Translations under genes and position numbers: made by a program
Assembly (NCBI RefSeq): GCF_006345805.1
Contig: NC_042999.1
Span: 61,938,001-62,002,000 of the forward strand
DNA: 64,000 nucleotides
Direction of reading: 5' to 3'
DNA from: Octopus sinensis
Taxonomy: Eukaryota
In this document: piece after piece, positions 30,573 through 63,558 of the stretch
Numbering within the stretch: the stretch's first letter is position 1
How the letters are laid out: the number at the start of each line of letters is the position of its first letter
The notes under the pieces: model-generated
Databases searched by the model: none
Told to the model about the DNA's origin: nothing
The model's input: the letters and a program-made list of their open reading frames with translations, nothing else

Positions 30573-30644
<72 letters not shown>

Positions 30645-30646
<2 letters not shown>

Positions 30647-39690: not shown

Positions 39691-39696
39691 TGTATA

Positions 39697-39838
39697 GGCG
39701 CAGAAGGGGCTTTGTGGTAAGAAGTTTACCTCCTAATGACATGGTTCCGGGTTCAGTCCTACTACATGGCACCTTGGGCAAGTGTCTTGTACTATAGCCT
39801 CAGGCCGACCAAAGCCTTGTGAGGGGATTTGGTAGACG
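39697..39838 (+). mobile_element. SINE family A, 5' half
   Basis: Head and body up to GGTAGACG, then (TA)n. Confidence 0.8.
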
Positions 39839-39881
<43 letters not shown>

Positions 39882-40319
39882 GAGGATGTATATATATATA
39901 TATATTATATATATATATGCTCCTACCCTCCTATATATATACGAGGATATATATAATAAGCTCCTACCCTTCTTTTCTCTTCTCTTCACTCCTACCTACC
40001 TTCTCCCTTCGCCCTCTCCCTTCATCGTCACCCCTCCCTCGTAACACAATCCCTACACAATCCAACCCCACCTTACTTATCCATCCCTTACACCCACTCG
40101 CACATGCTCCACCTCTACCCCCATCCTCAGCCTAACCCACACCCCACCCTTGCTTTCACCATTCTCGCCTCTCCCACATCCCAACACCACCACACCACAC
40201 CGCACACCACCACACCATACACCACCATACCACACACCACATCACATCGTACCACCAGGCACACACTAGCACTGACCACTTCCCAGTCCCTTACCATCAT
40301 CCACACACCTACACATGCA

Positions 40320-40603
40320 CACATGCACACGTCAAGGTTACCAGCTCTCTTCCACACGCACATACATGCTCTCTTATACACATGAACACGCACCTTCGTT
40401 TTGGGATCACCTTTTTCGCCATGATAGATCCCTAGCCACTACACATTCTATTTTCTCTCCTTGTTTCTTTCTGTGTTCCTTTCTGTGGAAGAGCGTAGGC
40501 TCGAAACGTTAAAGACTTTTTTCACTTCCCGAGCGTTAAACTAATACATGTTTGTTGTCTACATCACCTATCTTCGTCTTTTGTTTTTTTGTGAATTCTC
40601 CCC
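40320..40603 (+). mobile_element. PLE-type 3' end (family P), hammerhead-like motif at ~40478-40515
   Basis: CTTT-CTGTGGAA-GAGC-gtag-GCTC-GAAACGT-T-AAAG; ends CTCCCC then TA/TG repeats. Confidence 0.7.
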
Positions 40604-40709
40604 CTATATATGTGTGTGTGTGTGTGTGTGTATGTGTGTGTGCGGGGATGTATGCGTGTGTATACATACATACTCACACATACATACATACATATATATG
40701 TATATATAT

Positions 40710-40966: not shown

Positions 40967-41039
40967 CAACCACGACGAGACTCGAACTCGCAATCTTCTG
41001 ATTCGAAGTCAGGCGCCTTATCCATTAGGCTGACACACA
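40967..41039 (-). pseudogene. tRNA-Arg(UCG) pseudogene
   Basis: 5' acceptor strand replaced; C-A mismatch in the anticodon stem. Confidence 0.85.
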
Positions 41040-41468
41040 TTTTAATTTATAGAACTTCAAGACATTCTGCCATTAAGTTATACATTTCCACCGTGCCTGC
41101 GATTTATATATGTGTGTGTGTGCGTGTTTAAGGACAGGCTTCTTTCAATTCCACTCATAAAACTTTTCTTAACCCGAGACTATAGAAAACCTATGCCCAA
41201 GATTCCACGCAGTGGGTCTGAACAGACGCCGCGTTCTTACCACACAGCCACGCCTGCCCCTGTGAAAATATTCACACCCAATCTCACAATGGGTTTCTTT
41301 CAGTTTCCGTTGGCCAGATTCCCTCACAAGGATTTGGTTATCCTAATGCTATAAAAGATACTTGGCTAAAGCGCTGTGTTGTGGGTTTGAACATAAAACC
41401 ATGTGAGAAGTTGAGAATTTTCCCTCTCAACCACACAGAGTATATTGCGACATAAAAATAATAATTTT

Positions 41469-41541
41469 CGACCACGACGAGACTCGAACTCGCAATTTTC
41501 TGATTCGAAGTCAGACGCCTTATCCATTAGGCCACGCGGCC
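41469..41541 (-). tRNA. tRNA-Arg-TCG: tRNA-Arg(UCG), apparently intact (one variable-loop change)
   Basis: 73-nt cloverleaf GGCCGCG TG GCCT AATGGATA AGGC G TCTGA CTTCGAA TCAGA AAATT GCGAG TTCGAGT CTCGT CGTGGTC G; T5 terminator ~10 nt downstream. Confidence 0.88.
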
Positions 41542-41667
41542 ACCTCTTTGGACAACCTTTAAATTATAGATCTTCAAGACATTGTTCCATTACGTTAAAC
41601 CTTTCCCCTGTGCCTGCGATTTATATATATGTGTATATATATATTTGTGTGTGTGTCTAGATATGCT

Positions 41668-41927: not shown

Positions 41928-42253
41928 CAGATAGATAGATATATAGATATATACGACGAGTCTCTTTCAGTTTCCGTCTACCAAATCCACTCATACGGCT
42001 TTGATTGACGCGAGGCTAAAGTAACAACATGCCTCACAGTGGGACTGAAATCGGTATCATGCGGTTTCAAAACACATACAATGGGCTTCTTCCAGTTTCC
42101 AACAGCCAAAATTTACTCTCAAGGATTTGTTTATCCAAGAGTTATAAAAGGCACTTTGCCAATGTGCTATGCAACGGAATTGAACCTAAAACCGTGTGGC
42201 TAGGAAACAAACTACTCAGCTAAAAAATCTGTATTATGATATAAAAATATATT

Positions 42254-42326
42254 CGACCACGACGAGACTCGAACTCGCAATCTTCTGATTCGAAGTCAGA
42301 CGCCTTATCCATTAGGCCACGCGGCC
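42254..42326 (-). tRNA. tRNA-Arg-TCG: tRNA-Arg(UCG), intact
   Basis: All four stems pair, anticodon TCG, A and B boxes intact, T5 run 7 nt downstream. Confidence 0.93.
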
Positions 42327-42524
42327 AGTTGCTGGAATAACATTTAATTTATAGATTTCTATGATATTGTTTTATTATGTTAAACTGTTCCACTGTGCCA
42401 GCGATTTCAATTTTATAGTTTAAAGACATGAGATAAATCCAGCGACTCACACACACACACACACATGCATACGCATGCACGACACGCGCGCGCATACAGA
42501 CACGTATGCACTCTCGTATATGTA

Positions 42525-42628
42525 GGAATGCCTGTGTAGTAAGCAGCTTGCTTAACAACCACGTAGTTCCGGGTTCAGTCCCACTGCGTGACACTGGGCA
42601 AGTGTCTTCTACTATAGCCTCGGACCGA
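42525..42628 (+). mobile_element. SINE family A, 5' fragment
   Basis: CTGTGTAGTAAGCAGCTTGC...GGTTCAGTCCCACTGCGTG...TATAGCCTCGG. Confidence 0.8.
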
Positions 42629-42884: not shown

Positions 42885-42936
42885 AAACCACGACGAGATT
42901 CGAAGTCAGACGCCTTCTCCATTAGGCGACGCGGTC
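42885..42936 (-). pseudogene. tRNA-Arg(UCG) pseudogene with a 21-bp internal deletion
   Basis: 52 bp instead of 73; most of the T-arm, the variable loop and the 3' anticodon stem are removed. Confidence 0.85.
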
Positions 42937-43375
42937 ACCCGATTGTTGCAACTTTAATTTATAGATCTTCAAGACATTGTTTCATTAAGTTTACAAATCT
43001 ATTTGTATATTTATTAATATCCGTCGCTACGTGCACATCTAATGATATATCTATAAACACACCAACGAATCTATCTAACAATCTGTCTGTTTGTTTAATT
43101 AACTATTATAACTGCTTTCCTTCCCGCCGGTCTATATATCAGTCTATTCTCCTATTACCAGTAAGCATTTAAAACTAATAATAAAAAAATTATGAACATC
43201 GATGGCCGAAGAATTTTTTGCCGAATGAATGGACACCAGAGGTATATTTTTAAGCTTTGTACTTATTCTATCGTTCGATGTTACTGAACCGCTAGCGTAC
43301 GGGGACATAACGCACCAACACGAGTTGTTAAGCGATGGCGGAGGACAAACAGACACAATGACACAAAGGCACCAG

Positions 43376-43407: not shown

Positions 43408-43422
43408 TTCATACACATAGAC

Positions 43423-43598
43423 ACATCACTAGCCACTACACATTCTTTATTTTCTCTTTTTGTTTCTTTCTGTTATCCTTTCTGTAGGAGAGCGTACGTT
43501 CGAAACGTTAAAGACTTTTTCACTTCCCGAGCGTTAAACTAATAAAGCTGTTGTCTACACCACCTGTCTTTGTCTTTTGCTTTTTTTGTGAATTGTCC

Positions 43599-43600
<2 letters not shown>
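43423..43600 (+). mobile_element. Family P 3' end with degenerate hammerhead-like motif
   Basis: CTGTAGGA-GAGC-gtac-GTTC-GAAACGT-T-AAAGA; ends at (TA)n. Confidence 0.65.
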
Positions 43601-43636
<36 letters not shown>

Positions 43637-43708
43637 TATGTAGGTCCCGGGTTGATTCGGGGTTAACCACAGTAAATAAGGTACTCAATACATTGCAGAG
43701 TAAAATTA

Positions 43709-44386
43709 ATTTATTATATAGAAGGAGCTTCTACAGGACTAGAACTGTTTCATTCAAGAGAAATCTTCAGGAAGCTAGTTAACAAGAATTGTATTGGCAT
43801 TTATACATTTAGGCAGGTTTAAAGGGGTGTTGGTGGGGGACTTTTTGGGGGTAGGCATAGCGCAAAATATCATACTTGGGGGAGTGGTCAAGGAGTCAGT
43901 GTTAAATTAGATAGAAGAATAAATAAAAAAATAAAAAAATAAAAAAATATAAAAAAATAAAAAAATAAAAAAATATAAAAATATATATAAAAAAAAGGGA
44001 ATAGAGTTTTAGGTAAATAAGGAGATTCTCACTTATACCTATGCACATATGTATACATATATACACACACATACAAACATATATACATATACATACACAT
44101 ACATACACACACACATATACATATATATACACTTACACATACATATACATATCTACACATACACATATATGTATACATACACACACTCACATGCATACAC
44201 GTATACACACATGTATATATACACACACGACCACACATACATATACACACAGAAAAATATATATACACATACACACACATACTCACATACACGCATACAC
44301 ACACATATCCACACACACACATGCACACACAGCACACTAGTCCCTATATACACACATATATATATATATACACATACACACATATA
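43709..44386 (-). repeat. Left arm of the ~670-bp long inverted repeat (pLTR)
   Basis: Near-identical reverse complement of 55912-56584, including the cryptic (CA/TA) tract. Confidence 0.95.
43726..43776 (-). ncRNA. Type I hammerhead ribozyme in the pLTR (predicted)
   Basis: Minus strand AGCTTC-CTGAAGA-T-TTC-tctt-GAA-T-GAAA-CAG-ttctagtc-CT-GTA-GAAGCT: 6-bp stem I, canonical core, GUA site. Confidence 0.8.
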
Positions 44387-44401
44387 TACACACACATACA
44401 T

Positions 44402-44479
<78 letters not shown>

Positions 44480-45192
44480 GTGTACTTATGCATACCTACA
44501 CATGCACACATATATATACACATACAAATACAGACCCATTCCCTAATTTTAATTTTATTATCTTCATTTATTACTTTTGTTATCTTTGACCGCTGGTCGC
44601 AAACATCTTGGCTATGACAGCCAGTACATTTATCTGTCTACTGGAAAACAAGCACTCATTCACTCACGCACACTCTTTAGCACGTACACTCACTCATTCG
44701 TACACTTATACACATACACGCTCCCACGCGTTATATTCATACATACTTACATCTACATATATTCACGTATATACGCATACGTACGCATACCTACCGATTC
44801 ATGTCTACACTCTTAGAAGGCTAGTCTATACATATACACCAATAAATATAAATACACACACATACATATACACCTACATACAAATACATACATGTATACA
44901 CATATATATATATACATATTCACACATATATACACACATATATATATATATATACATATATATACATATATACACATATAATATATATACACACATACAC
45001 ATACATACATATACACACATACACATATCTACGTATACATACATACATACATCCATACATCCATACATACATACATTTATACACATACACACACCCACAC
45101 GTATACATATACAAACATATATATACGCGCCTGCATACACATACAAATACATACACATACGCATATACATATACATACATACATATACACAC

Positions 45193-45238
<46 letters not shown>

Positions 45239-45261
45239 TATATATATAATATATATATATA

Positions 45262-48200
45262 TAGTGGGTAAATGGCCTATTATGGCCGTTCCTTGATTGT
45301 GATGTTGAACTTAATAATGGTCTATGACTATTTAATTTTTTCCCACTAGGCCGCTGGTGGCAAAAAAATTCTACAAAATTTTTTGCCACCCTATATTGAT
45401 TAATTATGAATTTTCTGGTTAATTCCGTAATGGAATCGGCGGCTTATATTTATTGGCTGCCGATAAATTTGGCGCGAGTGCGATGATTTGAAAATTTTAG
45501 GTCAGATATTGCCGAGGCAGGGACGGAAATGCCTCGTGAAAAATATCTGTTCCGACTTGGCTATTTCTTACTGATGATTTCTAAGGCCTATGGTAGATTG
45601 GCTTGATTTAATTTAATCAGGTAGTTTACCATTAAACAGTAGATGAAACGGTGCATCGTATAAGAAATACAGGGTAAATGTTTTTTAATTTTCTCCTGGT
45701 TTACGGAATTGATGTTATTTTGCGGTTGAAGCTTTTGGCTATTATTTCTAGTGGGTGAATGGCCTATTATGGCCGTTCTTGATTGTGATGTTGAACTTAA
45801 TAATGGTCTATGACTATTTAATTTTTTCCCACTAGGCCGCTGGTGGCAAAAAAATTCTACAAAATTTTTGCCACCCTATATTGATTAATTATGAATTTTC
45901 TGGTTAATTCCGTAATGGAATCGGCGGCTTATATTATTGGCTGCCGATAAATTTGGCGCGAGTGCGATGATTTGAAAATTTTAGGTCAGATATTGCCGAG
46001 GCAGGGACGGAAATGCCTCGTGAAAAATATCTGTTCCGACTTGGCTATTTCTTACTGATGATTCTAAGGGCCTATGGTAGATTGGCTTGATTTAATTTAA
46101 TCAGGTTAGTTTACCATTAAACAGTAGATGGAAACGGTGCATCGTATAAGAAATTACAGGGTAAATTTTTTTTTAATTTTCTCCTGGTTTACGGAATTGA
46201 TGTTATTTTGCGGTTGAAGCTTTTGGCTGTTATTTCTAGTGGGTGAATGGCCTATTATGGCCGTTCCTTGATTGTGATGTTGAACTTAATAATGGTCTAT
46301 GACTATTTAATTTTTTCCCACTAGGCGCTGGTGGCAAAAAAATTCTACAAAATTTTTTGGCACCTATATGATTAATTATGAATTTTCTGGTTAATTCCGT
46401 AATGGAATCGGCGGCTTATATTTATTGGCTGCCGATAAATTTGGCGCGAGTGCGATGATTTGAAAATTTAGGTCAGATATTGCCGAGGCAGGGACGGAAA
46501 TGCCTCGTGAAAAATATCTGTTCCGACTGCTATTTCTTACTGATGATTCTAAGGGCCTATGGTAGATTGGCTTGATTTAATTTAATCAGGTTAGTTTACC
46601 ATTAAACAGTAGATGAAACGGTGCATCGTATAAGAAATTACAGGGTAAATGTTTTTTAATTTTCTCTGGTTTACGGAATTGATTTATTTTGCGGTTGAAG
46701 CTTTGGCTGTTATTTCTAGTGGGTGAATGGCCTATTATGGCCGTTCCTTGATTGTGATATTGAACTTAATAATGGTCTATGACTATTTAATTTTTTCCCA
46801 CTAGGCCGCTGGTGGCAAAAAATTCTACAAAATTTTTTGCCACCTATATTGATTAATTATGAATTTTCTGGTTAATTCCGTAATGGAAATTGCGGCTTAT
46901 ATTTATTGGCTGCCGATAAATTTGGCGCGAGTGCGATGATTTGAAAATTTTAGGTCAGATATTGCCGAGGCAGGGACGGAAATGCCTCGTGAAAAATATC
47001 TGTTCCGACTTGGCTATTTCTTACTGATGATTCTAAGGGCCTATGGTAGATTGGCTTGATTTAATTTAATCAGGTTAGTTTACCATTAAACAGTAGATGA
47101 AACGGTGCATCGTATAAGAAATTACAGGGTAAATGTTTTTTAATTTTCTCCTGGTTTACGGAATTGATGTTATTTTGCGGTTGAAGATTTTGGCTGTTAT
47201 TTCTAGTGGGTGAATGGCCTATTATGGCCGTTCCTTGATTGTGATATTGAACTTAATAATGGTCTATGACTATTTAATTTTTTCCCACTAGGCCGCTGGT
47301 GGCAAAAAAATTCTACAAAATTTTTTGCCACCCTATATTGATTAATTATGAATTTTCTGGTTAATTCCGTAATGGAAATTGCGGCTTATATTTATTGGCT
47401 GCCGATAAATTTGGCGCGAGTGCGATGATTTGAAAATTTTAGGTCAGATATTGCCGAGGCAGGGACGGAAATGCCTCGTGAAAAATATCTGTTCCGACTT
47501 GGCTATTTCTTACTGATGATTCTAAGGGCCTATGGTAGATTGGCTTGATTTAATTTAATCAGGTTAGTTTACCATTAAACAGTAGATGAAACGGTGCATC
47601 GTATAAGAAATTACAGGGTAAATGTTTTTTAATTTTCTCCTGGTTTACGGAATTGATGTTATTTTGCGGTTGAAGCTTTTGGCTGTTATTTCTAGTGGGT
47701 GAATGGCCTATTATGGCCGTTCCTTGATTGTGATGTTGAACTTAATAATGGTCTATGACTATTTAATTTTTTCCCACTAGGCCGCTTGGTGGCAAAAAAA
47801 TTCTACAAAATTTTTTGCCACCCTATATTGATTAATTATGAATTTTCTGGTTAATTCCGTAATGGAAATTGCGGCTTATATATTGGCTGCCGATAAATTT
47901 GGCGCGAGTGCGATGATTTGAAAATTTTAGGTCAGATATTGCCGAGGCAGGGACGGAAATGCCTCGTGAAAAATATCTGTTCCACTTGGCTATTTCTTAC
48001 TGATGATTCTAAGGGCCTATGGTAGATTGGCTTGATTTAATTTAATCAGGTTAGTTTACCATTAAACAGTAGATGAAACGGTGCATCGTATAAGAAATTA
48101 CAGGGTAAATGTTTTTTAATTTTCTCCTGGTTTACGGAATTGATGTTATTTTGCGGTTGAAGCTTTTGGCTGTTATTTCTAGTGGGTGAATGGCCTATTA

Positions 48201-51200
48201 TGGCCGTTCCTTGATTGTGATGTTGAACTTAATAATGGTCTATGACTATTTAATTTTTTCCCACTAGGCCGCTGGTGGCAAAAAAATTCTACAAAATTTT
48301 TTGCCACCCTATATTGATTAATTATGAATTTTCTGGTTAATTCCGTAATGGAATCGGCGGCTTATATTTATTGGCTGCCGATAAATTTGGCGCGAGTGCG
48401 ATGATTTGAAAATTTTAGGTCAGATATTGCCGAGGCAGGGACGGAAATGCCTCGTGACAATATCTGTTCCGACTTGGCTATTTCTTACTGATGATTCTAA
48501 GGGCCTATGGTAGATTGGCTTGATTTAATTTAATCAGGTTAGTTTACCATTAAACAGTAGATGAAACGGTGCATCGTAAGAAATTACAGGGTAAATGTTT
48601 TTTAATTTTCTCCTGGTTTACGGAATTGATGTTATTTTGCGGTTGAAGCTTTTGGCTGTTATTTCTAGTGGGTGAATGGCCTATTATGGCCGTTCCTTGA
48701 TTGTGATGTTGAACTTAATAATGGTCTATGACTATTAATTTTTTCCCACTAGGCCGCTGGTGGCAAAAAAATTCTACAAAATTTTTTGCCACCCTATATT
48801 GATTATTATGAATTTTCTGGTTAATTCGTAATGGAATCGGCGGCTTATATTTATTGGCTGCCGATAAATTTGGCGCGAGTGCGATGATTTGAAAATTTTA
48901 GGTCAGATATTGCCGAGGCAGGGACGGAAATGCCTCGTGAAAAATATCTGTTCCGACTTGGCTATTTCTTACTGATGATTCTAAGGGCCTATGGTAGATT
49001 GGCTTGATTTAATTTAATCAGGTTAGTTTACCATTAAACAGTAGATGAAACGGTGCATCGTATAAGAAATTACAGGGTAAATGTTTTTTAATTTTCCTGG
49101 TTTACGGAATTGATGTTATTTTGCGGTTGAAGCTTTTGGCTGTTATTTCTAGTGGGTGAATGGCCTATTATGGCCGTTCCTTGATTGTGATGTTGAACTT
49201 AATAATGGTCTATGACTATTTAATTTTTTCCCACTAGGCCGCTGGTGGCAAAAAAATTCTACAAAATTTTTTGCCACCCTATATTGATTAATTATGAATT
49301 TTCTGGTTAATTCCGTAATGGAATCGGCGGCTTATATTTATTGGCTGCCGATAAATTTGGCGCGAGTGCGATGATTTGAAAATTTTAGGTCAGATATTGC
49401 CGAGGCAGGGACGGAAATGCCTCGTGAAAATATCTGTTCCGACTTGGCTATTTCTTACTGATGATTCTAAGGGCCTATGTAGATTGGCTTGATTAATTTA
49501 ATCAGGTTAGTTTACCATTAAACAGTAGATGAAACGGTGCATCGTATAAGAAATTACAGGGTAAATGTTTTTTAATTTTCTCCTGGTTTACGGAATTGAT
49601 GTTATTTTGCGGTTGAAGCTTTTGGTGCTGTTATTTCTAGTGGGTGAATGGCCTATTATGGCCGTTCCTTGATTGTGATGTTGAACTTAATAATGGTCTA
49701 TGACTATTTAATTTTTTCCCACTAGGCCGCTGGTGGCAAAAAAATTCTACAAAATTTTTTGCCACCCTATATTGATTAATTATGAATTTTCTGGTTAATT
49801 CCGTAATGGAATCGGCGGCTTATATTTATTGGCTGCCGATAAATTTGGCGCGAGTGCGATGATTTGAAAATTTTAGGTCAGATATTGCCGAGGCAGGGAC
49901 GGAAATGCCTCGTGAAAAATATCTGTTCCGACTTGGCTATTTCTTACTGATGATTCTAAGGGCCTATGGTAGATTGGCTTGATTTAATTTAATCAGGTTA
50001 GTTTACCATTAAACAGTAGATGAAACGGTGCATCGTATAAGAAATTACAGGGTAAATGTTTTTTAATTTTCTCCTGGTTTACGGAATTGATGTTATTTTG
50101 CGGTTGAAGCTTTTGGCTGTTATTTCTAGTGGGTGAATGGCCTATTATGGCCGTTCCTTGATTGTGATGTTGAACTTAATAATGGTCTATGACTATTAAT
50201 TTTTGCCCACTAGGCCGCTGGTGGCAAAAAAAATTCTACAAAATTTTTTGCCACCCTATATTGATTAATTATGAATTTTCTGGTTAATTCCGTAATGGAA
50301 TCGGCGGCTTATATTTATTGGCTGCCGATAAATTTGGCGCGAGTGCGATGATTTGAAAATTTTAGGTCAGATATTGCCGAGGTAGGGACGGAAATGCCTC
50401 GTGAAAAATATCTGTTCCGACTTGGCTATTTCTTACTGATGATTCTAAGGGCCTACGGTAGATTGGCTTGATCTAATTTAATCAGGTTAGTTTACCATTA
50501 AACAGTAGATGAAACGGTGCATCGTATAAGAAATTACAGGGTAAATGTTTTTTAATTTTCTCCTGGTTTACGGAATTGATGTTATTTTGCGGTTGAAGCT
50601 TTGGCTGTTATTTCTAGGGTGAATGGCCTATTATGGCCGTTCCTTGATTGTGATATTGAACTTAATAATGGTCTATGACTATTTAATTTTTTCCCACTAG
50701 GCCGCTGGTGGCAAAAAAATTCTACAAAATTTTTTGCCACCCTATATGATTAATTATGAATTTTCTGGTTAATTCCGTAATGGAAATTGCGTCTTATATT
50801 TATTGGCTGCCGATAAATTTGGCGCGAGTGCGATGATTTGAAAATTTTAGGTCAGATATTGCCGAGGCAGGGACGGAAATGCCTCGTGAAAAATATCTGT
50901 TCCGACTTGGCTATTTCTTACTGATGATTCTAAGGGCTATGGTAGATTGGCTTGATTTAATTTAATCAGGTTAGTTTACCATTAAACAGTAGATGATGAA
51001 ACGGTGCATCGTATAAGAAATTACAGGGTAAATGTTTTTTAATTTTCTCCTGGTTTACGGAATTGATGTTATTTTGCGGTTGAAGCTTTTGGCTGTTATT
51101 TCTAGTGGGTGAATGGCCTATTATGGCCGTTCCTTGATTGTGATGTTGAATTAATAATGGTCTATGACTATTTAATTTTTTCCCACTAGGCCGCTGGTGG

Positions 51201-53562
51201 CAAAAAAATTCTACAAAATTTTTTGCCACCCTATATTGATTAATTATGAATTTTTGGTTAATTCCCTAATGGAATCGGCGGCTTATATTTATTGGCTGCC
51301 GATAAATTTGGCGCGAGTGCGATGATTTGAAAATTTTAGGTCAGATATTGCCGAGGCAGGGACGGAAATGCCTCGTGAAAAATATCTGTTCCGACTTGGC
51401 TATTTCTTACTGATGATTCTAAGGGCCTATGGTAGATTGGCTTGATTTAATTTAATCAGGTTAGTTTACCATTAAACAGTGGATGAAACGGTGCATCGTA
51501 TAAGAAATTACAGGGTAAATGTTTTTTAATTTTCTCCTGGTTTACGGAATTGATGTTATTTTGCGGTTGAAGCTTTTGGCTGTTATTTCTAGTGGGTGAA
51601 TGGCCTATTATGGCCGTTCCTTGATTGTGATGTTGAACTTAATAATGGTCTATGACTATTTAATTTTTTCCCACTAGGGCCGCGGGTGCCAAAAAATTCT
51701 ACAAAATTTTTTGCCAACTATATTGATTAATTATGAATTTTCTGGTTAATTCCGTAATGGAATTGCGGCTTATATTTATTGGCTGCCGATAAATTGGCGC
51801 GAGTGCGATGATTTGAAAATTTTAGGTCAGATATTGCCGAGGCAGGGACGGAAATGCCTCGTGAAAAATATCTGTTCCGACTTGGCTATTTCTTACTGAT
51901 GATTCTAAGGGCCTATGGTAGATTGGCTTGATTTAATTTAATCAGGTTAGTTTACCATTAAACAGTAGATGAAACGGTGCATCGTATAAGAAATTACAGG
52001 GTAAATGTTTTTTAATTTTCTCTGGTTTACGGAATTGATGTTATTTTGCGGTTGAAGCTTTTGGCTGTTATTTCTAGTGGGTGAATGGCCTATTATGGCC
52101 GTTCCTTGATTGTGATGTTGAACTAATAATGGTCTATGACTATTTAATTTTTTCCCACTAGGCCGCTGGTGGCAAAAAAATTCTACAAAATTTTTTGGCA
52201 CCCTATATTGATTAATTATGAATTTTCTGGTTAATTCCGTAATGGAATCGGCGGCTTATATTTATTGGCTGCCGATAAATTTGGCGCGAGTGCGATGATT
52301 TGAAAATTTTAGGTCAGATATTGCCGAGACAGGGACGGAAATGCCTCGTGAAAAATATCTGTTCCGACTTGGCTATTTCTTACTGATGATTCTAAGGGCA
52401 TATGGTAGATTGGCTTGATTTAATTTAATCAGGTTAGTTTACCATTAAACAGTAGATGAAACGGTGCATCGTATAAGAAATTACAGGGTAAATGTTTTTT
52501 AATTTTCTCCTGGTTTACGGAATTGATGTTATTTTGCGGTTGAAGCTTTTGGCTGTTATTTCTAGTGGGTGAATGGCCTATTATGGCCGTTCCTTGATTG
52601 TGATGTTGAACTTAAAATGGTCTATGACTATTTAATTTTTTCCCACTAGGCCGCTGGTGGCAAAAAAATTCTACAAAATTTTTTGCCACCCTATATTGAT
52701 TAATTATGAATTTTCTGGTTAATTCCGTAATGGAATCGGCGGCTTATATTTATTGCTGCCGATAAATTTGGCGCGAGTGCGATGATTTGAAAATTTTAGG
52801 TCAGATATTGCCGAGGCAGGGACGGAAATGCCTCGTGAAAAATATCTGTTCCGACTTGGCTATTTCTTACTGATGATTCTAAGGGCCTATGGTAGATTGG
52901 CTTGATTTAATTTAATCAGGTTAGTTTACCATTAAACAGTAGATGAAACGGTGCATCGTATAAGAAATTACAGGTAAATGTTTTTTAATTTTCTCCTGGT
53001 TTACGGAATTGATGTTATTTTGCGGTTGAAGCTTTTGGCTGTTATTTCTAGTGGGTGAATGGCCTATTATGGCCGTTCCTTGATTGTGATGTTGAACTTA
53101 ATAATGGTCTATGACTATTTAATTTTTTCCCACTAGGCCGCTGGTGGCAAAAAAATTCTACAAAATTTTTTGCCACCCTATATTGATTAATTATGAATTT
53201 TCTGGTTAATTCCGTAATGGAAATTGCGGCTTATATTTATTGGCTGCCGATAAATTTGGCGCGAGTGCGATGATTTGAAAATTTTAGGTCAGGGACGGAA
53301 ATGCCTCGTGAAAAATATCTGTTCCGACTTGGCTATTTCTTACTGATGATTCTAAGGGCCTATGGTAGATTGGCTTGATTTAATTTAATCAGGTTAGTTT
53401 ACCATTAAACAGTAGATGAAACGGTGCATCGTATAAGAAATTACAGGGTAAATGTTTTTTAATTTTCTCCTGGTTTACGGAATTGATGTTATTTTGCGGT
53501 TGAAGCTTTTGGCTGTTATTTCTAGTGGGTGAATGGCCTATTATGGCCGTTCCTTGATTGTG

Positions 53563-53564
<2 letters not shown>
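45262..53564 (+). repeat. Tandem array of 17 full ~487-bp units plus a ~42-bp partial unit; retrozyme-like
   Basis: Unit starts (TAGTGGG) at 45262, 45749, 46237, 46717, 47204, 47693, 48180, 48666, 49150, 49638, 50127, 50615, 51103, 51590, 52075, 52563, 53049, 53523; flanked by (TA)n on both sides. Confidence 0.97.
47016..47122 (+). ncRNA. Type I hammerhead ribozyme with extended stem II (unit 4 shown; one per array unit; predicted)
   Basis: Stem I ATTTCTTA/TAAGAAAT (8 bp); core CTGATGA 47024-47030; GAAA 47099-47102; quasi-palindromic stem III ACGGTGCATCGT; GUA 47112-47114, predicted cleavage after 47114. Confidence 0.82.
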
Positions 53565-53599
<35 letters not shown>

Positions 53600-54010
53600 A
53601 TATTATATATATATATTATATATATATATATATATACATATATATACATACACACACATACATATACATACATACATATACAAATATACGCACACACATA
53701 CATACATACTCATATACACATACACATGTACATGCGTACCCATACACACACACACACGCGCGCATCCATATATACACATAAGTACACACATGCGTAAAAG
53801 TATACATATATCTATCCTTACACATACACACACACACACGCCTCCTTATATTCATACTTACATGCATACTCAAAAAGTAAGTACATAGCAAAATATATAT
53901 ACGCGCAGTTATTCATACATGCATACTCAAAAAATAAATAATAAATATTAAGTATATGTACGTGCAGTTACCTATTATATAGACGGATACATACATATAA
54001 ACTTACACAC

Positions 54011-54066
<56 letters not shown>

Positions 54067-54315
54067 CATATATACACACACATATACATATACATACATA
54101 CATATATGCATACATACACACACACACACATATACACATATATATATATATACATACTTACACACATGTACAAATACATACACACATAGATAACTCTACG
54201 TACCTACATATACATAAACACACGAGCGTACACGTATATGTACATATACACAGACACATACACACGCATATATATACATACATACATACACACATACATA
54301 CATATATGCATACAT

Positions 54316-54357
<42 letters not shown>

Positions 54358-54628
54358 TATACATATATATATACATATATATACATATACACACACATAT
54401 ACATGTGTGCAAACATACATACATACTCATACACGCACACACACTTACATATACATATATACACACACTTACACACATATATACATACACATATACATAC
54501 ATACATACATACATATATGCATACATACACACACACATATATATATACATACATACACATACACATACCTATACATATATATACACACATATATACACAT
54601 GCACATACTTATATCTCTACATACTCGC

Positions 54629-54668
<40 letters not shown>

Positions 54669-54900
54669 ATACATATACCTATATACATGTATATATACAC
54701 ACACATATATATACACATCTACAATTTGTATCTACACTCACATACATGCACATACACATATCTCTACATACCTACATATACATCGACATACTCGCGTACA
54801 CTCATGTATATACACATATATACATATACACACACACATACATATACATATACACATATATATATAAATATATGCATAATACACATATAAACACACATAC

Positions 54901-54935
<35 letters not shown>

Positions 54936-55572
54936 TATATATCTATATATACATATATACATATACATACACATATACATACGTGTACATATACATATAT
55001 ATACACATATATACACACACATACATATATCAACAATTGAGGGTAAAGTTAATTAGTTATTAATCAATTTCACCAAATATTCAGTATGTAAAAGGACCAT
55101 TATTTTTTTGAGTAAACAATGTCTGAGGGAAAATATTCTCTAAGTAGTGGAAGAGGCTAAAAAACTTTTTTGGTTGCTATTTCTAGAAAGTTCAGTCTGT
55201 GGCAAATTAATTTATTTTACTAAGCCCTAATTATATAATATTTTGTGCATACATACACATACATACACACATACATATACACATACATATGCATACACAC
55301 ATATATACACATATACATATATACATATATACACACCCACACACACACACACGTACATACATATATATATATATCTTTTTTTACATACATACACACACAC
55401 ACACACACATAATACATGCGTATATTCCTACTATACCCATACATTTCTATACATATATACGATACACATATACAAGCGTGCACATACAATATGTAAAAGG
55501 TCTTAGGAGAAAAGGTAATCGGGGGTGCTAGGGGAACGGTGGGATTGGGGGGGTTTTGTGGGTGGGGTGTCA

Positions 55573-55905
55573 TCAATCTGGTTGCCGGGTAGGTCTATAG
55601 TTCTTGTAGTTCGCATACTTCTTATGCATGCAATTTGGGGAGTGTTCTGAGATTTTGTTAAGGAGAGGGCCTTTGGCGAACAAGATCTCTAGGCTCTCCG
55701 ATATGCAGAGGTCACAGCAGGTATGGCCTCCTGTGTACGAGCGCGCCTTCTGTAGTAGTTTCCACTTGGTCTTGAAGGGGATGGAGTTCCTTTTAAGGTA
55801 CCAGATATGGGCGGCGAGGGTAGTTTGGTTGGATTTATCCTGTCGCCGGAACGAGTGTGTGTGTGCGTACCAACGGGTCTTAAAGCTGTTTGACGTCATT
55901 CCGAT
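55573..55905 (-). pseudogene. PLE GIY-YIG endonuclease C-terminal fragment (probably Naiad-type)
   Basis: IGMTSNSFKTRWYAHTHSF...TTLAAHIWYLK...WKLLQKARSY...CDLCISESLEI...LLNKISE...CMHKK; truncated at the YIG motif. Clade assignment is from memory of the motif. Confidence 0.85.
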
Positions 55906-55911
55906 GACGTC

Positions 55912-56578
55912 ATATATGTGTGTATGTGTATATATATATGTGTATATAGGGACTAGTGTGCTGTGTGTGCATGTGTGTGTGTGGATATGTGTGTGTATGC
56001 GTGTATGTGAGTATGTGTGTGTATGTGTATATATATTTTTCTGTGTGTATATGTATGTGTGGTCGTGTGTGTATATATACATGTGTGTATACGTGTATGC
56101 ATGTGAGTGTGTGTATGTATACATATATGTGTATGTGTAGATATGTATATGTATGTGTAAGTGTATATATATGTATATATGTGTGTGTGTATGTATGTGT
56201 GTATGTATATGTATATGTTTGTATGTGTGTGTATATATGTATACATATGTGCATAGGTATAAGTGAGAATCTCCTTATTTACCTAAAACTCTATTCCCTT
56301 TTTTTATATATATTTTTTTATTTTTTTATTTTTTTATTTTTTATATTTTTTTATTTTTTTATTTTTTTATTTATTCTTCTATCTAATTTAACACTGACTC
56401 CTTGACCACTCCCCCAAGTATGATATTTTGCGCTATGCCTACCCCCAAAAAGTCCCCCACCAACACCCCTTTAAACCTGCCTAAATGTATAAATGCCAAT
56501 ACAATTCTTGTTAACTAGCTTCCTGAAGATTTCTCTTGAATGAAACAGTTCTTGTCCTGTAGAAGCTCCTTCTATATA

Positions 56579-56584
<6 letters not shown>
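55912..56584 (+). repeat. Right arm of the long inverted repeat (inverted pLTR)
   Basis: Reverse complement of 43709-44386; lacks the terminal ~70 bp present at 43640-43708. Confidence 0.95.
56517..56567 (+). ncRNA. Type I hammerhead ribozyme in the inverted pLTR (predicted)
   Basis: AGCTTC-CTGAAGA(56523-56529)-TTTCTCTTGAAT-GAAACAG-ttcttgtc-CT-GTA(56559-56561)-GAAGCT. Confidence 0.8.
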
Positions 56585-56638
<54 letters not shown>

Positions 56639-57778
56639 TAGAAGTGGTGAAGAGATCCTGGTTTTAAGGGTTTCGCGAAAAGCCCGACTGGAGGCCAACC
56701 TTCCGAATTCTTTTACAGGGTTTAGAAGGACTGGAGGACCGCTGCAATAAGTGCGTGAATCTGACAGGCGACTACTTTTGAATAAAATCATAATTAACTA
56801 AGCCTCCTGTATTTTCTTTTGCCCAAAGCCAAGTGTCCAGTACACCCTTGTATGTACAACAGATTTCTTTGTGTTTCTATTTACAAAATCCACTCGCAAG
56901 GATTTGGTCGGCCCCAGGCTATAGTAGAAGATATTACCCAGGGAGAAGACACTCTCACGCAGTGGGACTCGACTCAATACCATGTGCTTTGAAAGCAAAC
57001 TTCTTACCGCACACACACACCTGCAACTATTAAAATATTCATACACACACACTCACAGCTGGGCTTCTTCCAGTTTCCAACTATCAATTCAACCAAAAGG
57101 ACTTGTTTGCCACAGGGCTATAAAAGATATTTGTACTAGGTGCAGTTCTATGGGATTGAACTAAAAATTACGTAGTTGAGAAGCAATATTTTCAATCGCA
57201 AACCTCTATATTATATCAAAAAAACAAAAAAAGAGGCAGAGAGACAGACAGTCTCCATCTTCAAAATCCATCTTCAAAATCCACTCACAAGGATTCCATA
57301 GAAGGTGCCACGCAAACTTCTGACTACAAAGCCACACCTGCGTCTATAAAATTATTCATTCACGCACACTCACAGTGAGCTTTTTCCAGTTGAATGAATC
57401 TACCCCATTGCTTATTATTTTAAATCCTTGTACTTATTCTATCGTTAGCTTCTACTGAACCGCTAGCGTACGGAGACATAATACATTAATGTCGATACCC
57501 CATGCTGGGGTGTCGACGTTAATGATTTTCTTAGCATTAGGTTTTAATACCCACCGGTATTATGAGAATACATAGATACATACACTGGCGGGAAGGAAAT
57601 TAATTATGATAGTTAATTAAACAGAAAGACGGATTGCTAGATAGATACGTTTGTGTGTCTATAGATATATCAATAAATTTGCACGCAGCGACAGATATTA
57701 ATAAATATACAAAGAGAAATGTAAACTTAATGAAACAACGTCTTGAATATCTATAAATTAAAGGAAGCGTCGTAAAGT

Positions 57779-57853
57779 GACCACATGGCGCCTAGTGGGT
57801 AAGACGTCTGACTTCAATACAGTAGACTGTGAGTTCGAATCTCGTCGTGGTAT
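57779..57853 (+). pseudogene. tRNA-Arg(UCG) pseudogene, inverted relative to the other copies
   Basis: GACCACATGGCGCCTAGTGGGTAAGACGTCTGACTTCAATACAGTAGACTGTGAGTTCGAATCTCGTCGTGGT; anticodon arm disrupted; shares cassette flanks. Confidence 0.8.
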
Positions 57854-57902
57854 CTCCATTTTTAATTTTGATATCATAATATACATATATATATATGTGT
57901 GT

Positions 57903-60049: not shown

Positions 60050-60236
60050 CACCATGCTTGACTGCTAAATCCACAGCCTTTTTTTTTTTATTCTCCCTCT
60101 GTTTATTTTATCTGCTGACGAGCGTGGGGTCGAAACGTAAAAGACGTTTTCACTTTCCTGAACGTTAAACTAATATACCTGCTTGTTGTTCATACACCTG
60201 TCTTCGTATTTTGCTTTTTTCTGTAAATTTCAACCA
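60050..60236 (+). mobile_element. Family P 3' end, degenerate hammerhead-like motif
   Basis: CTGCTGAC-GAGC-gtgg-GGTC-GAAACGT-AAAAGAC. Confidence 0.6.
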
Positions 60237-60721
60237 TATGAGAGTATTGTAGTTCGCTTGAAGCATTGTGTATTGTTTGTAAAGAATAAAAAGTTTTGAA
60301 TGGTACAGCAATGCACTATAATACAAACAATGGGCTATATACCAGTTGTAATTTAGTCAACCATCGTCTGATTATGGATGACTAAATTACAATAGGTATA
60401 TAGCCCATTGTTTGTATTATAGTGCATTGTTGTACAACTCAAATCTTTTTATTCTTTCGACCATATATATCTGTGTGTGTGTGTATATACGACTGGTGGT
60501 GAAGGGATCCTGGTTTTAAAGTATATATATATATGGTACTGGGTTCAGTCCGACTGTGTAGCACATTGGACACGTGTTTTCTACAGGGGTTTAGCCGCCC
60601 AAGTGCTATAAGAGACACTTGGCTGAGGTGCCGTACCCAAGGATTGAACCTAAAACTGTGTGGTCGAGAAACAAACTACTAAACCACGCACACTATATTA
60701 TGATATCAAGATTAAAGTTTC

Positions 60722-60794
60722 AGACCACGACGAGATTCAAACTCGCAATCTTCTGATTCGAAGTCAGCCGCCTTATCCATTAGGCCACGCGGTC
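60722..60794 (-). pseudogene. tRNA-Arg(UCG) probable pseudogene
   Basis: Full length, but T-loop TTCG changed to TTTG (B-box hit), G-A mismatch at the top of the anticodon stem, discriminator T. Confidence 0.8.
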
Positions 60795-61064
60795 ACCTGC
60801 TGGTACTTACTTTAATTTGCAGATCTGCAAGACATTAAGTTTACAAATCTATTTGTATATTTATTAATATCTGTCGCTACGTGCACATCTAATGATATAT
60901 CTATAAACACACCAATGAATCTATCTAGTAATCTATCTTTCTGGTTAATTAACTATCAAAACTACTTTTCTTCCCGCCGGTCTATATATCTTTCTATTAT
61001 CATAATACCAGTGAGAATTTAAACCTAATAATAAACAAAATTTATCAACGTCAATATCTATCTA

Positions 61065-62744: not shown

Positions 62745-63558
62745 ATACTCTGACATCCCTCACACATAAAAAAAAACATTCCATACAGCATAGTAATATG
62801 CACCTGCGCTATAGTGATTGACCCCAAAATATGTGAAATCCGACTCAACGAACTCAAAGACTTCCTCACAATGCAGAAATACCCCTTAGGATTAATTAAG
62901 AAGAGCATTAAAAAGTCGATGAAGCTAAGCATCGCCCAACTGCGGACACCCAAGAAAAAAATTAATGAGCACACGACCCAGTTTGTTAACACACACGGTC
63001 CTGGGATAACCAAAATCTTTCACGTCATAAAATCAAACTTAACTATACTCCCACAAAGTCCCATAATGAAAAGTCTGATTTAAAAAAAACCCTTACGGAA
63101 TAGTAGACGCCAACCAAAAAATCTTTTAAAAAACACCTCACAAAAGCAGAATTCACATCAGAGAATGAATCAGAATTCTTAGTAAAAGAATGTGGAGATA
63201 GGAGATGTGGACCATGCAACAACATCTTTAAAAACTTAGAAAGTGGTTCTCACATTAAATTCAAGGGCGTATTCTCGTTCAAAATAAATGCAGATATGAA
63301 CTGCAAAACGCAGAACCTCATATATTGCATTACCTGCACCAACTGCAAAGAAAATTACATTGGCGAAACAAATAATTTCCTCTGCCAACGTGCGAGAATA
63401 CACTAGCAGCATATCCGTTAAGCAAGCATCTGGAAACAGGAAGCGACAGAAAATTCAAAATCTTTCCCTTTTACAAACGTTTACGAGAAGACCCGCAAAA
63501 GCGAAAAGCAATGGAGCTACACTTCTTCGAAACTTTCTCTACAAAATTGAATGTTTGA
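62745..63558 (+). pseudogene. Penelope/Poseidon-type PLE remnant: RT thumb, linker and GIY-YIG endonuclease
   Basis: HPSHIKKNIPY...RLNELKDFL..QKYP; RRQPKNL; CGDRRCGPC; NCKTQNLIYCITCTNCKENYIGET; KFKIFPFYK...FSTKLNV*; stops and frameshifts. Confidence 0.9.

What the first reader, a model, noticed from the sequence alone, without database searches (positions are those of the whole stretch)
45262..53564. Retrozyme-like array: 17 tandem ~487-nt units, each with a type I hammerhead ribozyme
Seen: every unit contains ATTTCTTA-CTGATGA-[long stem II]-GAAA-CGGTGCATC-GTA-TAAGAAAT, i.e. an 8-bp stem I, canonical CUGAUGA/GAAA core and GUA triplet, and no meaningful ORF. Two units show damage (unit 7 lacks TA at the cleavage site; unit 12 has a GAT insertion). 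Known: metazoan non-LTR retrozymes are tandem non-coding repeats with one type I hammerhead per unit; their transcripts self-cleave into monomers that circularise, and PLEs are their proposed mobilisers. Inferred: this is a cephalopod retrozyme/circRNA locus. Its unit is longer than the few-hundred-nt monomers I recall, and I know of no octopus report but cannot verify that.
Basis: partly seen in the sequence, partly recalled or inferred. Interest (0 to 1): 0.93.

Follow-up and report, generated by a model that had tools for sequence, protein, structure and literature searches.

The report
Tandem repeat carrying hammerhead ribozymes
An 8.3-kb block of 17 near-identical 487-bp non-coding repeats each carries a self-cutting hammerhead RNA motif that looks built to work in pairs; this matches the animal 'retrozyme' repeats already known from corals, mussels and salamanders, so it is a probable new example, not a new kind of element.

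Summary
Positions 45262-53564 are a 487-bp x 17.1 tandem array (97% identity), and all 17 units carry ATTTCTTA-CTGATGA-[68-nt hairpin]-GAAA-CGGTGCATCG-TA|TAAGAAAT on the + strand. Chance gives about 0.017 such motifs per shuffled window.

New evidence:
- Helix III (ACGGUGCAUCGU) is a 12-nt palindrome. It is unstable as a hairpin (-0.2 kcal/mol) but forms a 12-bp duplex between copies (-17.5).
- The predicted best fold of two copies is exactly the double hammerhead, whereas the monomer's best fold sequesters the catalytic core.
- The monomer RNA is highly structured, much more so on the + strand.
- The array lies inside a (TA)n microsatellite, and two GIY-YIG nuclease remnants lie nearby.

Caveats:
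- No Rfam hammerhead model scores it, even at E<=10.
- Positions 10.1/11.1 are U.U, not G-C; axolotl retrozyme ribozymes provide a precedent.
- No relatives were found, so there is no covariation evidence.
- Expression, circularisation and cephalopod origin could not be tested.

Verdict: a probable new member of the metazoan non-LTR retrozyme / hammerhead-satellite class. The 487-bp unit is within the published range of 51-972 bp. Interest is moderate.

The parts
45262..53564 (+). Tandem array of 17.1 copies of a 487-bp (consensus 489-bp) non-coding unit, 36.8% GC, G/U-rich on the + strand. It holds 16 complete units plus partial units at both ends: it starts at TAGTGGGT and ends at GATTGTGAT, which is 17 units plus about 46 bp.
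47016..47122 (+). Representative intact type I hammerhead (copy 4). Stem I 5' strand 47016-47023; core CUGAUGA 47024-47030; helix II 47031-47098 (U.U, 4 bp, internal loop, 19 bp, 6-nt loop); G12-A14 47099-47101; palindromic helix III segment 47102-47113; A17 at 47114; stem I 3' strand 47115-47122.
   Evidence: Read directly from the sequence; folds; descriptor hit
47114..47115 (+). Predicted self-cleavage site, GUA|U. The equivalent sites recur every ~487 nt and would release a ~487-nt monomer running from 5' UAAGAAAU to CAUCGUA 3'.
   Evidence: Inferred from the hammerhead numbering; not tested experimentally
45195..45263 (.). (TA)n microsatellite abutting the left end of the array, with TA microhomology at the junction.
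53563..53640 (.). (AT)n microsatellite abutting the right end of the array, with AT microhomology at the junction.
43709..44387 (-). Left arm of an inverted repeat that brackets the array. Whether it belongs to the element is uncertain.
   Evidence: Self-BLAST 97.7% over 683 bp; alignment
55912..56584 (+). Right arm of the same inverted repeat. Its outer end abuts (TA)n.
56517..56567 (+). Compact hammerhead-like motif in the right arm (AGCUUC-CUGAAGA-U-UUC/GAA-U-GAAA-CAG..CUG-UA|GAAGCU). It is a candidate only.
   Evidence: Descriptor hit; no Rfam hit; fold z about 0
43726..43776 (-). The same compact hammerhead-like motif in the left arm, pointing outward. It is a candidate only.
55576..55914 (-). 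5'-truncated GIY-YIG nuclease-domain remnant 2 kb from the array. It is circumstantial evidence for PLE-type or other GIY-YIG elements at this locus.
63107..63555 (+). Remnant with a CX4CX2C knuckle followed by GIY...YIGET, resembling a PLE endonuclease; it is frameshifted. Circumstantial only.

Best explanation
The array is a non-LTR retrozyme-type hammerhead satellite. If the + strand is read through as a multimer, each unit supplies one type I hammerhead. That hammerhead barely forms alone, because its helix III is too weak as a hairpin and the monomer's best fold hides core nucleotides U4-G8. Two hammerhead domains from neighbouring units (or two molecules) can pair their palindromic helix III segments into a 12-bp helix and swap stem I strands, making a double hammerhead that cuts after GUA in both copies. 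This would release ~487-nt monomers with 5'-OH and 2',3'-cyclic phosphate ends, held together by the 8-bp stem I. By analogy with coral, mussel and axolotl retrozymes, a host tRNA ligase (RtcB type) would circularise them into a compact branched circRNA. Because the circle carries a single motif, it would be protected from re-cleavage. Also by analogy, rolling-circle reverse transcription of such a circle by a Penelope-like element's RT/GIY-YIG machinery, primed at a nick in (TA)n, would produce a head-to-tail array with arbitrary end points like this one. SHOWN here: the array, the complete core, the three helices, the palindromic helix III, the dimer versus monomer energetics, the strand-specific structure, the (TA)n flanks and the nearby GIY-YIG remnants. 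INFERRED: transcription, cleavage, ligation, mobilisation.
For: Array and motif: (13 of 17 intact; 0.017 chance hits per shuffled window). Stem I and helix II appear in the unconstrained minimum-energy fold, z = -6.8. Helix III is -0.2 kcal/mol as a hairpin and -17.5 as a 12-bp self-duplex. The cofold minimum of two 107-nt domains is exactly the double hammerhead, -78.3 against 2 x -33.9 kcal/mol, while the monomer minimum pairs core UGAUG with CAUCG of helix III. The circular monomer folds to -150.3 kcal/mol (z = -6.2, 60% paired) against -106.2 for the minus strand, matching GC skew +0.21 and AT skew -0.17, that is, + strand G.U pairing. GC is 36.8% and there is no ORF. The array is flanked on both sides by (TA)n, the reported PLE target (PMC8557442). 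GIY-YIG remnants lie 2 kb and 9.5 kb away. Literature: metazoan type I hammerheads have a short helix III with a palindromic loop and act as dimers in tandem repeats (PMC4209133). Axolotl HHR_Amex2 has the same U.U mismatch at the base of helix II and cleaves better as a dimer (PMC7229834). Mollusc (mussel) retrozymes exist and give abundant circRNAs (PMC7229834).
Against: No Rfam hammerhead family (Hammerhead_1, Hammerhead_3, Hammerhead_II, HH9, HH10) matches at gathering score or at E<=10 on a 1.5-kb stretch. Positions 10.1/11.1 are U.U, not the highly conserved G-C. No canonical loop 1 / loop 2 tertiary contact can be recognised, because helix II is a 68-nt hairpin and stem I is an uninterrupted 8 bp. 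In an 841-nt two-copy genomic transcript the inter-copy helix III has only about 11% ensemble probability, and core-sequestering pairs about 19%. Variation among units is spread evenly between the ribozyme and the rest of the unit (about 19 of 88 variable columns in 22% of the unit) and includes no compensatory change. No other copy exists in the window or in the metagenome collection, so mobility and conservation are unshown. Three T6 runs per unit would stop Pol III. No RT domain was detected in the window pieces scanned.
Confidence: 0.6

Rival explanations
1. It is an ordinary satellite that descends from a hammerhead-bearing repeat but is now inert. The array was amplified by unequal crossing-over or replication slippage within a microsatellite-rich region, is not transcribed or does not cleave efficiently, and the ribozyme is a recent fossil.
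For: No covariance-model hit. U.U at 10.1/11.1. No recognisable tertiary contacts. Four of 17 copies are altered next to the core. No excess conservation of the ribozyme within the array. Low predicted occupancy of the active fold in a long transcript. Only one locus was seen.
Against: All invariant core positions, the 8-bp stem I and the perfect 12-nt helix III palindrome are intact in 13 copies. Two copies cofold exactly into the double hammerhead. There is a 44 kcal/mol strand asymmetry in folding. Units are too similar (97%, mostly singleton indels that may be sequencing noise) for decay to be judged.
Confidence: 0.22
2. The array is not an independent retrozyme but part of a rearranged Penelope-like element insertion complex. 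In this reading it is a run of tandem pLTR-like units left by PLE integration into (TA)n, bracketed by head-to-head 5'-truncated PLE 3' ends (the inverted-repeat arms with compact hammerhead-like motifs).
For: PLEs form partial tandems and head-to-head inverted 5'-truncated copies, carry a hammerhead near the 3' end and prefer (TA)n (PMC8557442). The inverted repeat has outward-facing compact motifs ending 23 nt before the repeat boundary, with the right one abutting (TA)n. GIY-YIG remnants lie nearby. Xenopus retrozymes are related to PLE pLTRs (10.64898/2026.07.22.740005).
Against: No RT domain adjoins the array. There is no sequence similarity between the unit, the arms and the 3' flank of the GIY-YIG fragment. 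The compact motif has no Rfam hit and no thermodynamic signal. Relatives of the 55.6-kb GIY-YIG fragment are mostly ~170-aa proteins, and the longer ones scanned have no Pfam RT domain.
Confidence: 0.12
3. The hammerhead-like motif is a chance resemblance inside a repeat and has no ribozyme ancestry.
For: No Rfam hit; non-canonical 10.1/11.1.
Against: The expected number of descriptor hits is 0.017 per 64-kb window on both strands, and 0 in 300 shuffles with an 8-bp stem I. On top of that come the palindromic helix III, the exact double-hammerhead cofold and the tandem, low-GC, non-coding context typical of known hammerhead repeats.
Confidence: 0.03

Closest known systems
Metazoan non-LTR retrozymes (Cervera & de la Pena 2020, PMC7229834), in particular the axolotl Rtz353 / HHR_Amex2 family and the Mytilus galloprovincialis retrozymes
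   Same: One type I hammerhead per unit in head-to-tail tandem repeats, low GC, non-coding, highly self-paired monomer. Shares with HHR_Amex2 the U.U mismatch at the base of helix II and dependence on a dimeric ribozyme. If the source is a cephalopod, it shares the phylum Mollusca with the mussel elements.
   Different: The unit is 487 bp, against ~330-350 bp in axolotl and ~350-390 bp in mussel. Helix II is a 68-nt hairpin with a 19-bp distal stem, not ~4 bp plus a loop. Stem I is an uninterrupted 8 bp with no recognisable loop 1. Helix III is 3-4 bp plus a UGCA loop, embedded in a full 12-nt palindrome. No expression or circularity data exist, and only one locus is known.
Newt satellite 2 and avocado sunblotch viroid double hammerheads (Epstein & Gall 1987; Forster et al. 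1988, as cited in PMC4209133)
   Same: Helix III is too weak as a hairpin, is palindromic, and extends between two copies so that cleavage needs a multimeric transcript or two molecules.
   Different: The newt helix III is only 1-2 bp with a 2-4-nt loop, whereas here the palindrome is 12 nt. The newt ribozyme has canonical loop 1 / loop 2 contacts and a short helix II.
pDo500 satellite of Dolichopoda cave crickets (PMC2837043, PMC2808323)
   Same: A tandem satellite that carries a hammerhead and for which both single and double hammerhead folds have been proposed.
   Different: An insect family conserved across 12 species with documented compensatory changes. No comparative data exist for the present array, and the ribozyme sequences are unrelated.
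Minimal hammerheads in the pLTRs of Penelope-like elements (Cervera & de la Pena 2014, PMC4209133)
   Same: Type I topology, action as dimers, larger than usual helix II, palindromic 15.2-16.2 positions and loop 3, and association with GIY-YIG elements and (TA)n targets.
   Different: PLE min-hammerheads flank an RT-EN ORF, usually have helix I of 4-5 bp, helix II of 7-8 bp, an unpaired base after A9 and a conserved G10.1-C11.1. Here there is no adjoining ORF, stem I is 8 bp, and 10.1/11.1 are U.U.

Membership tests
Hammerhead ribozyme, type I | Invariant core C3-U4-G5-A6-N7-G8-A9 and G12-A13-A14 | tested here: met
   CUGAUGA and GAA are present in all 17 copies. The spacing around GAA is disturbed in copies 2 and 12.
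Hammerhead ribozyme, type I | A15.1-U16.1 pair and a non-G nucleotide at position 17 (NUH cleavage triplet) | tested here: met
   GAAA...CGUA|U gives a GUA triplet in 16 of 17 copies. Copy 7 lacks TA at the site.
Hammerhead ribozyme, type I | Three helices around the core, with helices II and III capped and helix I open | tested here: met
   The 8-bp stem I and the long helix II appear in the unconstrained minimum-energy fold. Helix III is 3-4 bp as a hairpin and 12 bp between copies. The descriptor passes in 13 of 17 copies.
Hammerhead ribozyme, type I | G10.1-C11.1 pair at the base of helix II | tested here: not met
   U.U in all copies. A precedent exists in axolotl HHR_Amex2, which is still active as a dimer (PMC7229834).
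Hammerhead ribozyme, type I | Tertiary contacts between loop 1 (in stem I) and loop 2 | tested here: inconclusive
   No canonical loops are present. Helix II has an internal loop 4 bp from the core that could substitute. Mussel retrozyme hammerheads also lack most of the archetypal contact nucleotides (PMC7229834).
Hammerhead ribozyme, type I | Match to a curated covariance model (Rfam Hammerhead_1 and related families) | tested here: not met
   No hammerhead family appeared at gathering score on the whole window or at E<=10 on 46500-48000.
Hammerhead ribozyme, type I | Covariation supporting the helices | tested here: inconclusive
   Units are about 97% identical. There is one U-A to U.G change in helix II (unit 13), two uncompensated changes in distal helix II (unit 11) and no compensatory pair. 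No relatives were found.
Hammerhead ribozyme, type I | Site-specific self-cleavage | not testable with these tools
   This needs in vitro transcription of monomer and dimer constructs.
Metazoan non-LTR retrozyme | Head-to-tail tandem repeats with one type I hammerhead per unit | tested here: met
   17.1 copies and 17 motifs, all on the + strand.
Metazoan non-LTR retrozyme | Unit of a few hundred bp (150-450 bp in PMC7229834; 51-972 bp in 10.64898/2026.07.22.740005) | tested here: met
   487-489 bp. This is just above the 2020 range and inside the 2026 range.
Metazoan non-LTR retrozyme | Low GC (<45-50%), non-coding, no LTR/PBS/PPT | tested here: met
   GC is 36.8%. The longest consensus ORF is 60 aa and has no homologues. 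There are no direct terminal repeats. The flanking repeat is inverted and unrelated to the unit.
Metazoan non-LTR retrozyme | Highly self-paired monomer RNA | tested here: met
   The circular fold is -150.3 kcal/mol, z = -6.2, with 60% of bases paired. The minus strand reaches only -106.2.
Metazoan non-LTR retrozyme | Expressed as unit-length linear and circular RNA | not testable with these tools
   No transcriptome data are available here.
Metazoan non-LTR retrozyme | Dispersed at several loci (mobility), with variable copy number per locus | not testable with these tools
   Only one locus lies in the 64-kb window. No source genome is available, and nothing was found in the metagenome collection.
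Metazoan non-LTR retrozyme | Co-existence with autonomous Penelope-like elements in the genome | tested here: inconclusive
   Two GIY-YIG nuclease remnants were found (55576-55914 on the minus strand; 63107-63555 on the plus strand with a CX4CX2C knuckle). No RT domain was detected in the window.
Penelope-like element pLTR hammerhead | Hammerhead lies in terminal repeats flanking an RT-GIY-YIG ORF | tested here: not met
   No RT-EN ORF lies next to the array. Units are non-coding and repeated 17 times.

The most novel reading that the evidence does not exclude
The whole 12.9-kb structure (43709-56584) could be one composite unit: a hammerhead array inserted in (TA)n and bracketed by a 97.7-99% identical inverted repeat. 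Each arm ends 23 nt after an outward-facing compact hammerhead-like motif, and a truncated GIY-YIG nuclease gene lies inside. If so, it would be either a caught-in-the-act footprint of retrozyme mobilisation by a GIY-YIG (PLE-type) element, or a previously undescribed ribozyme-bounded, foldback-like carrier of retrozyme arrays. In addition, the ribozyme itself (68-nt helix II, U.U at 10.1/11.1, 12-nt palindromic helix III, invisible to all Rfam models) may represent a hammerhead architecture that current genome screens systematically miss.
Probability: 0.12. Interest if true: 0.7.

Novelty: new member of a known kind. Interest (0 to 1): 0.4.

Why it matters
If it is active, this locus would add another lineage to the animals known to encode ribozyme-processed small circRNAs. 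It would also be a clear natural example of a hammerhead whose activity is gated by copy number, cutting in multimers and staying silent as a monomer or circle. Practically, it shows that standard covariance-model screens can miss hammerheads with long helix II inserts and a non-canonical 10.1/11.1 pair, so counts of such elements in animal genomes may be underestimates. It does not change the current picture of retrozymes, which are already described as widespread but patchy across metazoan phyla, including molluscs.

Tried and rejected
1. Rfam cmscan found only tRNAs and noise, with no hammerhead: the whole window at gathering score, 46500-48000 at E<=10 and 56480-56600 at E<=10.
2. Comparative data all came back empty: a pseudo-ORF of the repeat against 5.8 billion proteins; two pattern scans of metagenome contigs; nhmmer with the unit profile against the rest of the window; and self-BLAST. 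So no covariation test was possible.
3. Selection within the array could not be judged. Variable columns are spread in proportion between the ribozyme and the rest of the unit and are mostly singleton indels, possibly long-read noise.
4. Organism identification failed. An exact look-up of a neighbouring ORF was not on record. Mariner relatives occur in fish and mantis shrimp, so they say nothing about the host. The GIY-YIG fragment has no close relative in the 90% clusters.
5. I tested whether the inverted-repeat arms, the 3' flank of the GIY-YIG fragment and the array unit are homologous, after noticing a C-rich tract resemblance. This was rejected: only low-complexity matches appeared.
6. 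I tested whether the 55.6-kb GIY-YIG fragment is the EN domain of a PLE RT-EN protein. This is not supported: most relatives are ~150-220 aa, and the long ones scanned have no Pfam RT domain.
7. The compact flank motif as a solid hammerhead is not supported beyond the descriptor hit.
8. The bacterial promoter/terminator scan was not used because it does not apply to eukaryotic DNA.

Full report
OBSERVATION. Tandem Repeats Finder reports one array at 45262-53564 with period 487, 17.1 copies, 97% matches and 1% indels. The heptamer CTGATGA occurs 17 times inside it, always as ATTTCTTA-CTGATGA-[about 68 nt]-GAAA-CGGTGCATCG-TA-TAAGAAAT on the + strand. I wrote a formal type I hammerhead descriptor: contiguous stem I >=5 bp next to the core, CUGANGA, helix II >=3 bp with one tolerated mismatch at its base, GAAA, helix III >=3 bp starting with A15.1-U16.1, and H17 not G. 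Thirteen of the 17 copies pass with stem I = 8, helix II = 4 (proximal part) and helix III = 4.

ANATOMY OF THE RIBOZYME (copy 4, 47016-47122).
- Stem I is AUUUCUUA/UAAGAAAU, 8 uninterrupted base pairs.
- The core is C3UGAUGA9.
- Helix II is 68 nt: a U.U mismatch at 10.1/11.1, then UCUA/UAGA, an internal loop, a 19-bp distal stem and a 6-nt loop.
- G12A13A14 follows.
- Helix III is ACGG/UCGU around the loop UGCA.
- A17 is at 47114, and predicted cleavage falls between 47114 and 47115.
The unconstrained minimum-energy fold reproduces stem I and helix II (-33.9 kcal/mol, z = -6.8 against shuffles). However, it pairs core U4-G8 with CAUCG of helix III rather than forming helix III. The hammerhead-compatible monomer fold is 3.4 kcal/mol worse.

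THE DIMER SIGNATURE. The helix III segment ACGGUGCAUCGU is a complete 12-nt palindrome, counting G.U pairs. It is worth only -0.2 kcal/mol as a hairpin but -17.5 kcal/mol as a self-duplex. The cofold minimum of two 107-nt domains is, pair for pair, the classical double hammerhead: an inter-copy 12-bp helix III, swapped stem I strands and both cores unpaired. It scores -78.3 kcal/mol against -67.8 for two separate monomers. This matches what Cervera & de la Pena 2014 (PMC4209133) describe for most metazoan type I hammerheads, namely a short helix III capped by a small palindromic loop, inactive alone and active as a dimer in tandem repeats. Axolotl retrozymes show the same behaviour, and their HHR_Amex2 family also has a U.U mismatch at the base of helix II (PMC7229834). 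One caution applies. In an 841-nt genomic two-copy transcript the inter-copy helix III has only about 11% ensemble probability, core-sequestering pairs about 19% and the single-copy helix III about 0.2%. The dimer is therefore strongly preferred over the monomer, but the active fold is not predicted to dominate at equilibrium.

THE UNIT AS AN RNA. The consensus unit is 489 nt, 36.8% GC, with no ORF above 60 aa. A 102-aa fused piece had no homologue. The circular + strand monomer folds to -150.3 kcal/mol (z = -6.2, 60% paired), while the minus strand reaches only -106.2. This agrees with the + strand being G/U-rich (GC skew +0.21, AT skew -0.17), so the structure relies on G.U pairs and is strand-specific. 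Three T6 runs per unit would terminate Pol III, so a multimeric transcript implies Pol II or read-through transcription; this is an inference. No other ribozyme family is detected on either strand.

WHAT SPEAKS AGAINST.
- No Rfam hammerhead model scores the motif at gathering score or at E<=10. The likely reasons are the 68-nt helix II, U.U at 10.1/11.1 and the absence of canonical loops, but the tool cannot take an edited sequence, so this remains unproven.
- G10.1-C11.1 is highly conserved in canonical and PLE hammerheads (PMC4209133) and is absent here.
- Variation among units is mostly singleton indels, spread in proportion between the ribozyme (about 19 of 88 variable columns in 22% of the unit) and the rest, with no compensatory change. 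It is uninformative either way.
- No relatives were found: self-BLAST and nhmmer in the window, two metagenome scans and the protein route.

CONTEXT. The array starts as (TA)n|TAGTGGGT and ends as GATTGTGAT|(AT)n, which is 17 units plus about 46 bp inside a TA microsatellite with 2-4 nt of microhomology at each junction. (TA)n is the preferred target reported for PLE endonucleases (PMC8557442). An inverted repeat, 43709-44387 against 56584-55912 (97.7% over 683 bp, with the unique outer 335 bp about 99% identical), brackets the array. Both arms end exactly at ...CCTTCTATATAATAAAT. Each arm carries, 23 nt from its outer end and pointing outward, a compact hammerhead-like motif (56517-56567 on the + strand; 43776-43726 on the - strand). 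This was the only other descriptor hit in the window. It too has a U.U at the base of a weak 3-bp helix II, but it has no Rfam hit and no thermodynamic signal (z about 0), so I treat it as a candidate only. Between the array and the right arm lies a 5'-truncated GIY-YIG nuclease remnant (55576-55914, minus strand). It belongs to a large unannotated family of 2,961 representatives. The alignment shows CNC..CPL..C, IVYKA, YIGxT, R..H, E and N motifs, and 4 of 12 members weakly hit Pfam GIY-YIG. At 63107-63555 (+) there is a second, frameshifted remnant with a CX4CX2C knuckle followed by NLIYCITC..NYIGET, which resembles a PLE endonuclease. No RT domain was detected, and the arms, the unit and the GIY-YIG flank share no sequence similarity. 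A PLE connection is therefore suggestive, not shown.

COMPARISON WITH KNOWN SYSTEMS. Cervera & de la Pena 2020 characterise metazoan non-LTR retrozymes as short tandem repeats with type I hammerheads, low GC, no LTR/PBS/PPT and highly self-paired RNAs that accumulate as circles. They found them in corals, mussels, axolotl and many other invertebrate phyla, and proposed PLEs as the mobilisers. A 2026 preprint extends consensus lengths to 51-972 bp and links the elements phylogenetically to PLE pLTRs. The present array meets every genomic criterion I could test. Its differences are the very long helix II, the uninterrupted 8-bp stem I, the full 12-nt helix III palindrome and invisibility to Rfam. 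The unit length is not exceptional. In the searchable library only two works mention both 'hammerhead ribozyme' and 'cephalopod', and neither describes such repeats. I could not verify that the window comes from a cephalopod.

VERDICT. This is a real, well-formed, probably dimer-dependent type I hammerhead repeated once per unit in a retrozyme-type tandem array. It is a new member of a known kind. Cleavage, circularisation, mobility and host identity remain to be shown. Confidence in the retrozyme-type mechanism is about 0.6. The main rival is a recently inert hammerhead satellite (about 0.2). A PLE-complex origin has about 0.1 and chance about 0.03. Interest is 0.4.

Noticed in passing
43709-44387 and 55912-56584: A 683-bp inverted repeat (97.7% identical overall; the unique outer 335 bp about 99%) brackets the array. 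Both arms end exactly at CCTTCTATATAATAAAT. Beyond that, the right arm runs into (TA)n and the left arm into a SINE-like repeat.
   Followed up: partly
56517-56567 (+) and 43776-43726 (-): A compact hammerhead-like motif (6-bp stem I, CUGAAGA, U.U plus a 3-bp helix II, GAAA, 4-bp helix III, GUA) sits near the outer end of each inverted-repeat arm and points outward. It was the only other descriptor hit in the window (0.017 expected). It has no Rfam hit and its fold z-score is about 0.
   Followed up: partly
55576-55914 (-): A 5'-truncated GIY-YIG nuclease-domain remnant. Its relatives form a large family (2,961 representatives at E<=0.001), mostly 150-220 aa proteins with a Cys-rich N-terminus, and have essentially no Pfam annotation.
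   Followed up: partly
62754-63555 (+): A frameshifted remnant with a CX4CX2C knuckle followed by NLIYCITCTNCKENYIGET (Pfam GIY-YIG E=0.003, below the cutoff). It looks like the endonuclease end of a Penelope-like element, but no RT part was recognised upstream.
   Followed up: partly
41468-41542, 42253-42327, 60722-60794, 62268-62341 (all -); partial copy at 40975-41031; tRNA-like at 23041-23108 (+): Four tRNA-Arg(TCG) genes and further partial copies lie in repeated blocks of about 300-370 bp on both sides of the array region (for example 42897-43197, about 60755-61049 and about 62302-62595, with an inverted copy at 57513-57883). This is a tRNA gene cluster or a tRNA-derived repeat family.
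   Followed up: no
13560-14443 (+); 31806-32412 (-); 6665-6943 (-): A mariner/Mos1 transposase remnant (HTH_48 plus Transposase_1), a Tc1-like remnant (HTH_Tnp_Tc3_2 plus DDE_3) and a LINE-RT-like fragment. The closest mariner relatives (83-91% identity) occur in fish, mantis shrimp and unnamed assemblies, so the family appears to have spread horizontally and gives no information on the host.
   Followed up: partly
Array units 3, 4, 5, 11 and 16 (unit positions 363-365), and units 3, 4 and 11 (position 231): Shared substitutions (TCG to ATT; G to A) define sub-families of units scattered through the array. This is real variation, in contrast to the many singleton homopolymer indels that may be sequencing noise.
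   Followed up: no
818-1262, 6119-6551, 23120-23601, 39693-39918, 42522-42628 and others; also 8400-8720, 21765-22055, 30536-30738, 40415-40611, 43415-43639, 60077-60239, 63647-63839: Two short interspersed repeat families (75-94% identical copies, on both orientations) are scattered through the window and often sit next to microsatellites.
   Followed up: no
10268-10481 and 60281-60457: Two local palindromes that match their own reverse complement (84% and 89% identity).
   Followed up: no
55165-55186: A 19-nt similarity (TTTTGGTTGCTATTTCTAG, E about 0.03) to the unit segment that lies immediately upstream of the point where the array begins. It may be a vestige of the unit or a coincidence.
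   Followed up: no
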